Origin: Macrostomum lignano
Lineage: Eukaryota
Length of the DNA: 64,000 nucleotides
Reading direction: 5' to 3'
Assembly: GCA_002269645.1 (NCBI GenBank)
Contig: NIVC01001398.1
Coordinates: 124,001-188,000, forward strand
In this document: in pieces, positions 24,801 through 25,696 of the stretch
Layout: each line of letters begins with the position of its first letter
How positions within the stretch are numbered: the first letter of the stretch is position 1
Notes under the pieces: generated by a model
What the model saw: only the letters and a program-made list of their open reading frames with translations
Databases searched by the model: none
What the model was told of the DNA's origin: nothing
Program-made: the position numbers and the translations under genes

Positions 24801-25696
24801 TTGCTTCTCCGGGGCTCTGTCTGATTCTCTACCCTTCAGCTCCCCAGCCACCCTGTTGCTTCTCTTATCTACATGTGCAGCTGTGCTTCTGTTTGAAGAG
24901 GTCAGACTGAAGAGCCAATCAGAAGCCAGCAAGGGAGAGAGATAAGAATAACGAGACTGAACTAGACAGAGGGAGAGAAAACAGAGTAAACAGAAACGAG
25001 GGGTGGGTGAAGTGCGCGGACTGAGGAAAAAGGTCAGATTGAAGAGCCAATCAGAAGACAGAAAGGAGACAGGAGAGAGAGATAAGAATAAAAATGTTGA
25101 ACTGGTCACAGAGGGAGATAAAACAGAGTAAACAGAGACGATGGCAGATGAACTGAATAGATGACTAAGAAAGCCGCGAGAATGTCATTTTCTCTCCCTC
25201 TGTCCAGACATGGCCATAGACATCCGCTGGGAGTGCAACTCCCTCTTCACCTCCCCGCTTCTCACTTGCTCTCCCTTATTACTTTGTCAACTACCTCCTT
25301 CCATCTCTCGTATTCCTCCCTTTTCTTTCCTTCTCTATTCCCGTGTCTCTTATCCCTCTGTCTCTTTTTTTCCTCACTCATTTTATACTAGCAACCCCCC
25401 ATCGGCCCCTTCCCCATCAGGTGATGTGCGAAGAGTCCCTAGCCGCCGCCCTGACAGTTGAAAACGTCTGCGACTGTCTGGTGCTGGCCGACCTGCACTG
25501 CGCCGCTCAGCTGCGCCAACGGGCCAGCCAGTTCATTCTGGCCAACGCCTCCCGGGTCGCCGAGTCTCCCGGCTGGGACCAGATGGTCCGCCGACAGCCG
25601 CACCTGGTTGCCGAAGCCTTCAAAGCCCTGGCCGCTCAGGCCGCGCCGCCCATGGGGCCGACACCTAAAAAGCGAATGAAGCTGCCGGCTAGTTGA
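18885..25696 (+). CDS. SPOP: Speckle-type POZ protein (MATH-BTB-BACK CUL3 substrate adaptor; roadkill homologue), 495 aa with N-terminal extension (393 aa if started at ATG 19473)
   Basis: Exons 18885-18932 (putative), 19215-19717, 23575-23729, 23832-23959, 24409-24786 and 25421-25696; phases are consistent. Near-identical to vertebrate SPOP motifs: [142 protein letters not shown], with C-terminal NLS PKKRMK. The first exon is less certain than the rest. Confidence 0.95.
19905..20233 (-). mobile_element. tRNA-derived CORE-like SINE, copy C, with (ATT)n 3' tail (antisense in SPOP intron)
   Basis: Most complete copy: tRNA head at ~20160-20233, core TTGAGCTAGACACTTAACTCTGCATTGCTTCAGTTCACCCAGCTGTAAAATGGG on minus, and taataataataataatagtaatagtaat tail at 19905-19940. 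Confidence 0.88.
20860..21560. repeat. Minisatellite, 29-30 bp unit (ctgagtctgggccgctcctggttcttaa)
   Basis: Over 20 tandem units in SPOP intron. Confidence 0.95.
21662..22170. repeat. (GACA)n tetranucleotide microsatellite
   Basis: GACA/AACA iteration; gives the SVCL artefact ORFs. Confidence 0.95.
23165..23500. repeat. Minisatellite, 32 bp unit (catcagtgtgaatgtacattagaataagcggg)
   Basis: About ten tandem units just upstream of a SPOP exon. Confidence 0.93.
24072..24392. repeat. Minisatellite, ~32 bp unit (cagacattgtcaggaccaaccatcgcaatggt)
   Basis: Tandem units running to within ~15 nt of the SPOP acceptor at 24408. Confidence 0.93.
24895..25240 (+). pseudogene. Duplicated fragment of the P2X gene (intron end, acceptor and first ~33 nt of exon) inside SPOP last intron
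   Basis: Colinear with 58258-58600, including the tandem gattgaagagccaatcag-containing dimer and gtcattttctctccctc(tgt/ttt)ccag followed by CATGG(TGG)CCATAGACATCC(G/A)CTGGGAGTGCAACT. Confidence 0.85.

What the first reader, a model, noticed from the sequence alone, without database searches (positions are those of the whole stretch)
24895..25240. A piece of the P2X gene (intron, acceptor and exon start) copied into the last SPOP intron: a ready-made truncating splice acceptor
Seen: 24895-25240 is colinear with 58258-58600 over ~345 bp. Both carry a ~135-bp tandem dimer with gattgaagagccaatcag (a CCAAT-box-like motif), then gtcattttctctccctc..ccag and the exon start. SPOP copy: ccag|ACATGGCCATAGACATCCGCTGGGAGTGCAACT. 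P2X original: ccag|GCATGGTGGCCATAGACATCCACTGGGAGTGCAACT. Established: the I.W.C motif is conserved P2X ectodomain sequence, so P2X is the donor and the SPOP copy is derived. Inference: the copied pyrimidine tract and AG (25206-25207) lie 213 nt upstream of the true SPOP acceptor (25420). The preceding SPOP exon ends in phase 0, so use of this site would read ACA TGG CCA TAG. That gives a MATH-BTB protein lacking the BACK domain and NLS, with the stop in the terminal exon, so it would likely escape junction-dependent NMD. This looks like exon capture or shuffling caught in the act. The vehicle (a Helitron-like capture, or a local or ectopic duplication) is unknown.
Basis: partly seen in the sequence, partly recalled or inferred. 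Interest (0 to 1): 0.75.

Follow-up and report, generated by a model that had tools for sequence, protein, structure and literature searches.

The report
P2X gene fragment inside SPOP intron
A 345-base piece of a flatworm ion-channel gene (the end of an intron plus the first 33 bases of the next exon) was copied long ago into an intron of the neighbouring SPOP gene; the copy is real, but it looks like an ordinary, neutrally decaying small duplication, and the annotated transcripts show no use of its splice site.

Summary
Window 24896-25240 matches 58259-58600 colinearly (89% identity at aligned bases, 8 indel events, E about 1e-99). The organism is Macrostomum lignano. The window is NIVC01001398.1, at window coordinate + 124000.

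The donor is intron 4 / exon 5 of a P2X receptor gene. The recipient is the last intron of a SPOP gene 33 kb upstream on the same strand. The direction P2X to SPOP is well supported: the exon start encodes a motif conserved across animal P2X receptors, and a P2X paralogue matches only from the exon start onward.

It is not an assembly artefact. All three homeologous contigs of the neopolyploid genome carry it, two of them with three repeat units instead of two. The copying therefore predates the subgenome split. It is not "caught in the act".

Divergence in the copied acceptor and exon start fits neutral decay.

The acceptor is intact and strong by sequence (16 of 17 pyrimidines). Its use would give ...DRLK-TWP-stop. 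All three RNA-seq-derived SPOP models use the normal acceptor, and no truncated product is on record.

I found no transposon hallmarks, but genome-wide copy number could not be tested.

Verdict: a real but ordinary old gene-fragment duplication. The functional reading is untested and unlikely.

The parts
24409..24786 (+). SPOP exon 4 (BTB domain). It ends in phase 0 with ...CTC AAG (L K), followed by the donor gtgact.
   Evidence: Exact spliced mapping of P0001 onto the window. Translation. Pfam BTB match at residues 207-310.
24787..25420 (+). SPOP intron 4, the last intron (634 nt). It is made of a 109-nt native 5' part, the 345-nt P2X-derived insert, and a 180-nt pyrimidine-rich native 3' part.
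   Evidence: The older SPOP paralogue has an intron at the same position and phase (1094 or 1287 nt) with no P2X-like sequence.
24896..25027 (+). Copy of repeat unit 1 (132 nt), containing GGTCAGACTGAAGAGCCAATCAG. It corresponds to donor 58259-58395.
   Evidence: (91.7% identity to donor unit 1).
25028..25160 (+). Copy of repeat unit 2. It corresponds to donor 58396-58525.
   Evidence: (83.3% identity).
25161..25207 (+). Copy of the unique 3' end of P2X intron 4. It has a branch-point-like CTAAG at 25165-25169, a pyrimidine tract at 25188-25205 (one G, at 25202), and AG at 25206-25207.
   Evidence: 23 of 24 identical in the last 24 nt; 16 of 17 pyrimidines at -20..-4.
25208..25240 (+). Copy of the first 36 nt of P2X exon 5, with a 3-nt slippage deletion (TGGTGG to TGG) and 2 substitutions. 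In the SPOP frame it reads ACA TGG CCA TAG, with the stop at 25217-25219.
25421..25696 (+). SPOP last exon (end of BTB, BACK domain, basic C-terminal tail, stop codon). Every annotated model uses its acceptor.
57908..58564 (+). P2X intron 4 (657 nt). It holds the donor repeats: a partial unit at 58230-58258, unit 1 at 58259-58395 and unit 2 at 58396-58525. The acceptor has a 17 of 17 pyrimidine tract and AG at 58563-58564.
58565..58685 (+). P2X exon 5, phase 1, encoding [41 protein letters not shown]. The first 36 nt were the source of 25208-25240.
   Evidence: Conservation of the motif across animal phyla.

Best explanation
This is a one-off DNA-level dispersed duplication. A contiguous stretch of at least 345 bp was copied from the neighbouring P2X receptor gene into intron 4 of the SPOP gene. 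The stretch comprises two 132-138-nt intronic tandem repeat units, the unique end of intron 4 with its branch site, pyrimidine tract and AG, and the first 36 nt of exon 5. The recipient lies 33 kb upstream on the same strand.

The most likely mechanism (inferred, not shown) is repair of a break in the SPOP intron, or a replication template switch, that used the nearby P2X locus as template. No transposon need be involved.

The event predates the split of the three M. lignano subgenomes. Afterwards the array gained or lost one repeat unit in one lineage. The copy has since decayed at the neutral rate.

Its splice acceptor is still intact, simply because too little time has passed to destroy it. 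In the annotated transcriptome SPOP splices past it to the normal acceptor. The insert is therefore best seen as intronic passenger DNA carrying a latent, at most weakly used, truncating 3' splice site.
For: - Real and colinear.
- Organism and contig: Macrostomum lignano; L003 is identical to window 9302-35696.
- Present in three separate contigs: NIVC01001398.1, NIVC01002223.1 and NIVC01004319.1. These are 95-98.7% identical to one another, as expected for the S, L1 and L2 subgenomes. Two of them have 3 units instead of 2 (PMC10733133).
- Direction, motif: the exon start encodes GG[MVI]xx[IF]xIxWxC[ND][LF]D, conserved from cnidarians to mammals and in all M. lignano P2X paralogues.
- Direction, P2X paralogue: P2X paralogue L006 matches the window only from the exon start onward, and its 660-nt intron is unrelated.
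- Direction, donor lineage: at the three exon-start positions (all third-codon positions, with the encoded residues unchanged in both P2X genes) where window P2X and L006 differ, the copy carries the window-P2X base.
- Direction, SPOP paralogue: it has the same intron position without the insert.
- Neutral decay: the repeats, neutral on both sides, differ by 8-17%. The acceptor and exon start, constrained on the donor side only, differ by 1 of 24 and 2 of 33 bases plus one slippage deletion. That is about the one-lineage share.
- No special conservation of the insert: the whole SPOP gene body 23498-25891, introns 2-4 included, has only 1-2 variable sites among the three homeologs.
- No transposon hallmarks: no target-site duplication, no poly(A), no TC...CTRR ends.
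- Normal acceptor used by all models: P0001, P0121, P0122, P0123 and P0124. The GenBank annotation comes from genome-guided RNA-seq assembly and keeps isoforms whose CDS differs (PMC5730564).
Against: - Genome-wide copy number could not be measured. A low-copy mobile carrier is therefore not excluded.
- No empty site is available, so junction microhomology, the signature of templated repair, could not be examined.
- An 8-nt inverted match (TGAAGAGG at 24894-24901, CCTCTTCA at 25242-25249) sits at the two junctions. Only about 1% of shuffles reproduce it, and the test was chosen post hoc. It could hint at terminal inverted repeats or a hairpin-prone break site.
- By sequence the copied acceptor is stronger than the true one (16/17 against 13/17 pyrimidines) and it lies upstream. 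Complete silence would need explaining. Minor isoforms may have been filtered out of the annotation.
Confidence: 0.72

Rival explanations
1. Transposon-mediated capture. A Helitron, Pack-type TIR element or similar picked up the P2X intron/exon junction and inserted it into the SPOP intron. The fragment would then be one member of a dispersed family.
For: Gene-fragment capture by such elements is well known (my own knowledge). An 8-nt inverted match lies at the two junctions (I19; about 1% of shuffles). The genome is more than half repetitive (PMC5730564).
Against: The block of homology does not start with TC or end with CTRR, and it has no subterminal GC hairpin. There is no target-site duplication and no poly(A). 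The right arm of the inverted match lies in native SPOP intron sequence that is absent from the donor. No other copy of the unit was found in 230 kb of M. lignano sequence. The donor lies in cis, 33 kb away on the same strand, which a local repair event explains more simply.
Confidence: 0.13
2. Functional alternative 3' splice site. The captured acceptor is used in some tissue, stage or stress condition to make a MATH-BTB protein that ends ...DRLKTWP. It would lack the BACK domain and the basic C-terminal tail and would act as a modulator or dominant-negative of SPOP.
For: An intact CTAAG branch-like site, a 16/17 pyrimidine tract and an AG lie upstream of the true acceptor. There is an in-frame stop after 3 codons. 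No usable GT donor lies between 25208 and 25420, so the stop would sit in a terminal exon. The site is identical in all three homeologs.
Against: No annotated or database protein has this end. The annotation is RNA-seq-based and keeps isoforms with different CDS. Identity among homeologs is not specific to the insert, because introns 2 and 3 are equally invariant. Divergence from the donor fits neutrality. The pyrimidine tract is complementary to ACAGAGGGAGAGAAAA in the upstream repeat units and pairs with them in the predicted fold, although the fold is no more stable than shuffles.
Confidence: 0.1
3. Ectopic gene conversion between pre-existing repeat arrays. Both introns already held copies of a dispersed ~135-nt repeat family. 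A conversion tract started in the repeats and ran from P2X into SPOP, carrying the acceptor and exon start along.
For: The left breakpoint falls exactly at a repeat-unit boundary. The array is recombinogenic: unit number differs between homeologs, and the extra unit is a unit-2-start/unit-1-body hybrid.
Against: No evidence that the unit is a dispersed family: there are no other copies in 230 kb. Units 1 and 2 of the copy are orthologous one-to-one to donor units 1 and 2, which a single copying event explains without assuming earlier repeats.
Confidence: 0.05
4. Assembly chimera, or chance or convergent similarity.
For: 36% of Mlig_3_7 scaffold length is reported as chimeric between subgenomes (PMC10733133).
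Against: The same insert sits at the same place in three different contigs, with a unit-number difference and a flanking SNP. E = 6e-100. Similarity runs through unique intron sequence into conserved coding sequence.
Confidence: 0.01

Closest known systems
Small dispersed partial-gene duplications and templated sequence insertions made during double-strand-break repair or replication template switching (for example the partial gene duplicates described in C. elegans, and templated insertion polymorphisms in human; my own knowledge)
   Same: A single contiguous, colinear block of a few hundred bp copied from a unique donor on the same chromosome. It contains non-coding plus a little coding sequence, has no transposon ends, and lies in an intron.
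   Different: Junction microhomology and the empty site could not be examined. The copied block starts inside a tandem repeat array that has itself changed unit number since.
Gene-fragment capture by Helitrons or Pack-MULE/Pack-TIR elements
   Same: A piece of one gene spanning an intron-exon junction ends up inside another gene and could be spliced into its transcript.
   Different: No Helitron termini, no TIR plus target-site duplication, and no evidence of multiple copies.
Exonization of intronic insertions and cryptic 3' splice sites (for example Alu exonization; my own knowledge)
   Same: Inserted DNA supplies a pyrimidine tract and AG upstream of the authentic acceptor. Its use would introduce a premature stop.
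   Different: Here the acceptor arrived ready-made from a real exon rather than arising by mutation, and no transcript using it is on record.

Membership tests
Dispersed DNA-level gene-fragment duplication (templated insertion) | One contiguous block colinear with a unique donor, spanning non-coding and coding sequence | tested here: met
   24896-25240 against 58259-58600: 89% identity at aligned bases, the same order of unit 1, unit 2, intron end and exon start.
Dispersed DNA-level gene-fragment duplication (templated insertion) | Donor sequence is ancestral at its own locus, which gives the direction of copying | tested here: met
   The exon start encodes a motif conserved across animal P2X receptors. 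Paralogue L006 matches from the exon start only. The SPOP paralogue intron lacks the insert.
Dispersed DNA-level gene-fragment duplication (templated insertion) | Microhomology or blunt junctions at an otherwise intact target site (comparison with an empty site) | not testable with these tools
   All three homeologs carry the insert. No sister-species genome is reachable.
Dispersed DNA-level gene-fragment duplication (templated insertion) | Low copy number: donor and recipient only | tested here: inconclusive
   No further copy in the window or in 166 kb of other M. lignano loci. The whole genome is not searchable here. The ORF-proxy search and the metagenome scan were empty and uninformative.
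Helitron capture | 5'-TC and 3'-CTRR termini, a subterminal GC-rich hairpin, insertion between A and T | tested here: not met
   The block begins AAGAGGTC after ...TTTG and ends GCAACT before CCCT. There is no GC hairpin near the 3' end. The element could in principle extend beyond the homologous block.
TIR transposon / MITE / Pack-type element | Terminal inverted repeats flanked by a target-site duplication | tested here: not met
   Only an 8-nt inverted match at the junctions (I19; about 1% of shuffles). Its right arm is outside the donor-derived block. No flanking direct repeat.
LINE-mediated retrocopy | Intron-less, 3' poly(A), target-site duplication | tested here: not met
   The copy is mostly intron sequence, has no A-run at its 3' end and no target-site duplication.
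Alternative / cryptic 3' splice site in use | Branch site, pyrimidine tract and AG compatible with the spliceosome | tested here: met
   CTAAG at 25165-25169, 16/17 pyrimidines at -20..-4, CAG|A. This is the best of ten acceptors in the two genes apart from its own donor.
Alternative / cryptic 3' splice site in use | Transcripts joining 24786 to 25208 | not testable with these tools
   No RNA-seq access. Indirectly negative: five protein models use 25421, and none ends ...DRLKTWP.
SPOP (MATH-BTB-BACK) for the recipient gene | MATH, BTB and SPOP-type BACK domains in that order | tested here: met
   Pfam MATH_2 at 48-177, BTB at 207-310, BACK_BPM_SPOP at 317-368. 63-70% identity to animal SPOP/roadkill among the listed hits.
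P2X receptor for the donor gene | P2X_receptor domain (PF00864) and conserved ectodomain cysteines and motifs | tested here: met
   All hits carry PF00864. Seven exons were mapped. Motif alignment.

The most novel reading that the evidence does not exclude
The P2X-derived acceptor is a conditionally used alternative 3' splice site, retained in all three subgenomes. It would yield a SPOP isoform ending ...DRLKTWP that keeps substrate binding (MATH) and most of BTB but loses the BACK domain and the nuclear-targeting tail. That would be a natural dominant-negative or cytoplasmic SPOP created by shuffling a neighbour's splice site.
Probability: 0.06. Interest if true: 0.55.

Novelty: new member of a known kind. 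Interest (0 to 1): 0.24.

Why it matters
This is a clean, datable example of how a ready-made splice acceptor can be moved from one gene into the intron of another. The donor and recipient lie 33 kb apart, the direction is clear, the event is older than the M. lignano genome duplication, and the copy is present in all three subgenomes. That makes it raw material for exon shuffling or truncated isoforms.

It would matter for SPOP biology only if the site is used, and nothing here suggests that. On present evidence it is a curiosity for annotators: a strong decoy acceptor that gene predictors could mis-use. It is also a small data point on local templated duplications in a repeat-rich neopolyploid genome.

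Tried and rejected
- A window-wide direct-repeat search was swamped by a 12-nt minisatellite. I replaced it with BLASTN self-comparison.
- Copy-number proxy: I searched the open minus-strand frame of the repeat against 5.8 billion predicted proteins, hoping non-coding ORFs from sequencing-run assemblies were indexed. There were no hits, not even to itself, so the result is uninformative.
- An exact-pattern scan of JGI metagenome contigs with the repeat core found nothing, as expected.
- Rfam over the whole window: nothing in either copy, so the repeat is not a known RNA gene.
- RNA folding of both copies: the pyrimidine tract pairs with the repeats in the MFE and centroid structures, but z-scores are -0.25 and -0.85, no better than shuffles. 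I rejected this as evidence of a structured element.
- The minus-strand 137-aa ORF across the repeats (24696-25109) was rejected as a gene: it is low-complexity, has no homologues, and the donor copy has stops.
- The idea that the two introns independently received a dispersed repeat was rejected, because similarity continues through unique intron sequence into conserved exon.
- The idea that a different P2X paralogue was the donor was rejected for L006. It is implausible for the others, which are 12-17% diverged at the protein level, far more than the 11% neutral DNA divergence of the copy.
- A possible relation between the 32-nt tandem repeat in SPOP intron 3 and the repeat core (both have GTCAGA...CCAAYCA) did not hold up on inspection.
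- I did not try walking along contig NIVC01004319.1 to reach the P2X homeolog. The window-type P2X has no GenBank protein to anchor look-ups.

Full report
**What is there**

Reading the two regions and aligning them confirms the finding almost to the base. A BLASTN self-comparison of the window gives 24896-25240 against 58259-58600 on the same strand: 82.9% identity over 356 columns including gaps, E = 6e-100. The only other hits are the internal unit-to-unit matches. A repeat-masked self-comparison of all 64 kb finds no third copy. A global alignment gives 295 of 331 aligned bases identical (89%) and 8 indel events.

Each copy holds two tandem units of 130-138 nt with the core GGTCAGAYTGAAGAGCCAATCAGA. 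The donor has an extra partial unit at 58230-58258. Unit 1 matches unit 1 (91.7%) and unit 2 matches unit 2 (83.3%) better than the units match each other within a copy. The dimer therefore already existed when the copy was made.

**Genes and organism**

A protein search with the spliced SPOP product returns a 100% match to Macrostomum lignano "Speckle-type POZ protein". The P2X product matches M. lignano "ATP receptor" entries. Locus L003 from GenBank contig NIVC01001398.1 is identical to window 9302-35696, so window coordinate + 124000 gives the contig coordinate.

Exact spliced mapping gives these SPOP coding exons: 19473-19717, 23575-23729, 23832-23959, 24409-24786 and 25421-25693, followed by the stop codon. 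The P2X exons are 47506-47713, 54680-54860, 54927-c.55086, c.57665-57907, 58565-58685, 58780-59014 and 61063 onward. Both genes are on the + strand. The recipient site lies 33 kb upstream of the donor site.

Pfam places BTB at residues 207-310 and the SPOP-type BACK domain at 317-368. The exon 4/5 junction is K302|V303.

**Direction of copying**

P2X exon 5 begins in phase 1 and encodes [14 protein letters not shown]. The motif GG[MVI]xx[IF]xIxWxC[ND][LF]D is present in P2X receptors from cestodes, schistosomes, molluscs, annelids, crustaceans, tardigrades, corals, hemichordates and mammals. It is also in every M. lignano paralogue.

A paralogous P2X gene (P0126, locus L006) aligns to the window only from the first base of this exon. 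Its 660-nt intron is unrelated and has no repeat. At the three exon-start positions where the window P2X and L006 differ (all third-codon positions; the encoded residues are the same in both P2X genes), the SPOP copy carries the window-P2X base.

The older SPOP paralogue (P0002, loci L001 and L002) has an intron at the same position and phase, 1094 or 1287 nt long, with no trace of P2X sequence.

So the exon start and its acceptor are ancestral in P2X, the insert is derived in SPOP, and the donor belongs to the window's own P2X lineage.

**Not an artefact, and not recent**

Two further contigs encode the same SPOP protein: NIVC01002223.1 (L004) and NIVC01004319.1 (L005). They are 95-98.5% identical to the window across the locus and 96-98.7% identical to each other. 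This matches the three homeologous subgenomes (S, L1, L2) described for the Mlig_3_7 assembly, which have about 2.2% SNP divergence (PMC10733133).

Both contigs carry the insert at the same place, with three repeat units instead of two. The extra unit starts like unit 2 and continues like unit 1. Otherwise there is a single SNP in the whole intron.

Mis-assembly is therefore excluded. The insertion predates the subgenome split, and the array has changed unit number since. With about 11% substitutions between copy and donor, against about 2% between subgenomes, the event is several-fold older than the genome duplication. "Caught in the act" does not fit.

**Is the copy under selection?**

In the repeats, both lineages are free to change, and divergence is 8-17%. 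In the last 24 nt of the intron and the exon start, the donor side is constrained. There the copy differs by 1 of 24 bases and by 2 of 33 bases plus one TGGTGG-to-TGG slippage deletion. That is roughly the one-lineage share of the neutral divergence. At about 6% change per site, an AG dinucleotide survives with probability near 0.88. The intact acceptor is therefore expected by chance.

The insert is invariant among the three homeologs, but so is the entire gene body 23498-25891, including introns 2 and 3. That stretch has only 1-2 variable sites, while the flanks show 2.7% and 1.2%. The invariance is a property of the locus, not of the insert.

**Could the acceptor work?**

By sequence, yes. 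There is a CTAAG branch-like site at 25165-25169. The tract at -20..-4 has 16 of 17 pyrimidines, followed by CAG|A. The true SPOP acceptor has 13 of 17, and eight other acceptors in the two genes have 9-13 of 17. The donor itself has 17 of 17.

Joining 24786 to 25208 reads ...[12 protein letters not shown]-stop. The product keeps MATH and Pfam BTB positions 2-99 of 110, and loses BACK and the basic C-terminal tail. No convincing GT donor lies between 25208 and 25420, so the stop would be in a terminal exon.

Against use:
- The GenBank annotation derives from genome-guided RNA-seq assembly and retains isoforms whose CDS differs (PMC5730564).
- All three GenBank SPOP models and both UniProt models splice to 25421.
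- No product with the truncated end appeared in the protein search, where it would have ranked near the top.

The pyrimidine tract is complementary to ACAGAGGGAGAGAAAA in the repeat units (20 nt at 95%, and 16 nt at 94%). It pairs with them in the predicted fold of both copies. The folds are no more stable than shuffles, however, and the donor acceptor works despite the same feature.

The NMD-escape argument presumes junction-dependent NMD. That has not been shown for flatworms, and the isoform would have a 3' UTR about 480 nt longer (my own knowledge and inference).

**Vehicle**

The homologous block has none of these:
- TC...CTRR ends;
- a subterminal GC hairpin;
- a poly(A) tail;
- a target-site duplication.

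The one oddity is an 8-nt inverted match, TGAAGAGG at 24894-24901 and CCTCTTCA at 25242-25249, sitting at the two junctions. About 1% of shuffles reproduce it, but the test was post hoc, and the right arm is native SPOP intron.

An HMM built from the seven repeat units finds no other copy in 230 kb of M. lignano DNA at E <= 10. This excludes only a very abundant family.

A local, same-strand donor 33 kb away, a single colinear block and the absence of transposon ends favour a repair- or replication-templated insertion. That mechanism is inferred, not shown.

**Verdict**

It is a new instance of a known kind of event. The interesting functional reading remains untested and, on present evidence, unlikely.

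Noticed in passing
window 3665-3939, 11076-11313, 19951-20231: A dispersed repeat of about 280 bp in three copies (72-89% identity). 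The first copy contains a tRNA-like hit (Rfam RF00005, 3870-3942 minus strand, 30.5 bits), so this is probably a tRNA-derived SINE. The third copy lies in SPOP intron 1.
   Followed up: partly
window 23498-25891 compared with L004 and L005: The SPOP gene body, including introns 2-4 and a 32-nt tandem repeat array in intron 3, has only 1-2 variable sites among the three homeologous contigs. The sequence just upstream has 2.7% variable sites and downstream 1.2%. This suggests recent homogenisation (gene conversion) or unusual constraint.
   Followed up: partly
L005 about 5340 (equivalent to window 25567): A 1-nt deletion in a C-run of the last SPOP exon in contig NIVC01004319.1 gives GenBank protein PAA47829.1 a frameshifted C-terminus (...[13 protein letters not shown]...). 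It is either a long-read homopolymer error or a disabled homeolog.
   Followed up: partly
window 24962-24981 and 25108-25123 against 25188-25207; donor 58466-58490 against 58544-58563: The pyrimidine tract and AG of the P2X exon-5 acceptor are the reverse complement of a purine-rich segment of the upstream repeat units, in both donor and copy. They pair in the predicted folds, but overall stability is not better than shuffles.
   Followed up: yes
window 24894-24901 and 25242-25249: An 8-nt perfect inverted match (TGAAGAGG / CCTCTTCA) lies exactly at the two junctions of the insert. About 1% of shuffles of the 3' flank reproduce it (post hoc test).
   Followed up: partly
window 38600-42000; also 21479-22187, 53267-54700, 55025-55592, 62625-63915: A very large minisatellite with a 12-nt period (more than 250 copies) and several long (CTGT)n / (ACAG)n-type microsatellites. 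This fits the reported 15% simple and tandem repeat content of this genome.
   Followed up: no
window 47754-47987 and 49302-49534: A local 235-bp duplicate (87-88% identity) inside P2X intron 1. UniProt model A0A1I8G2Z9 (P0125) shows the exon-1 peptide twice, although the window has only one exon-1 copy.
   Followed up: no
window 47506-61698: The window's P2X gene has no GenBank protein model; only UniProt models from the older assembly exist. Paralogues P0126 and P0160 are annotated. The gene may be weakly expressed, or it may have been filtered out for repeat overlap.
   Followed up: no
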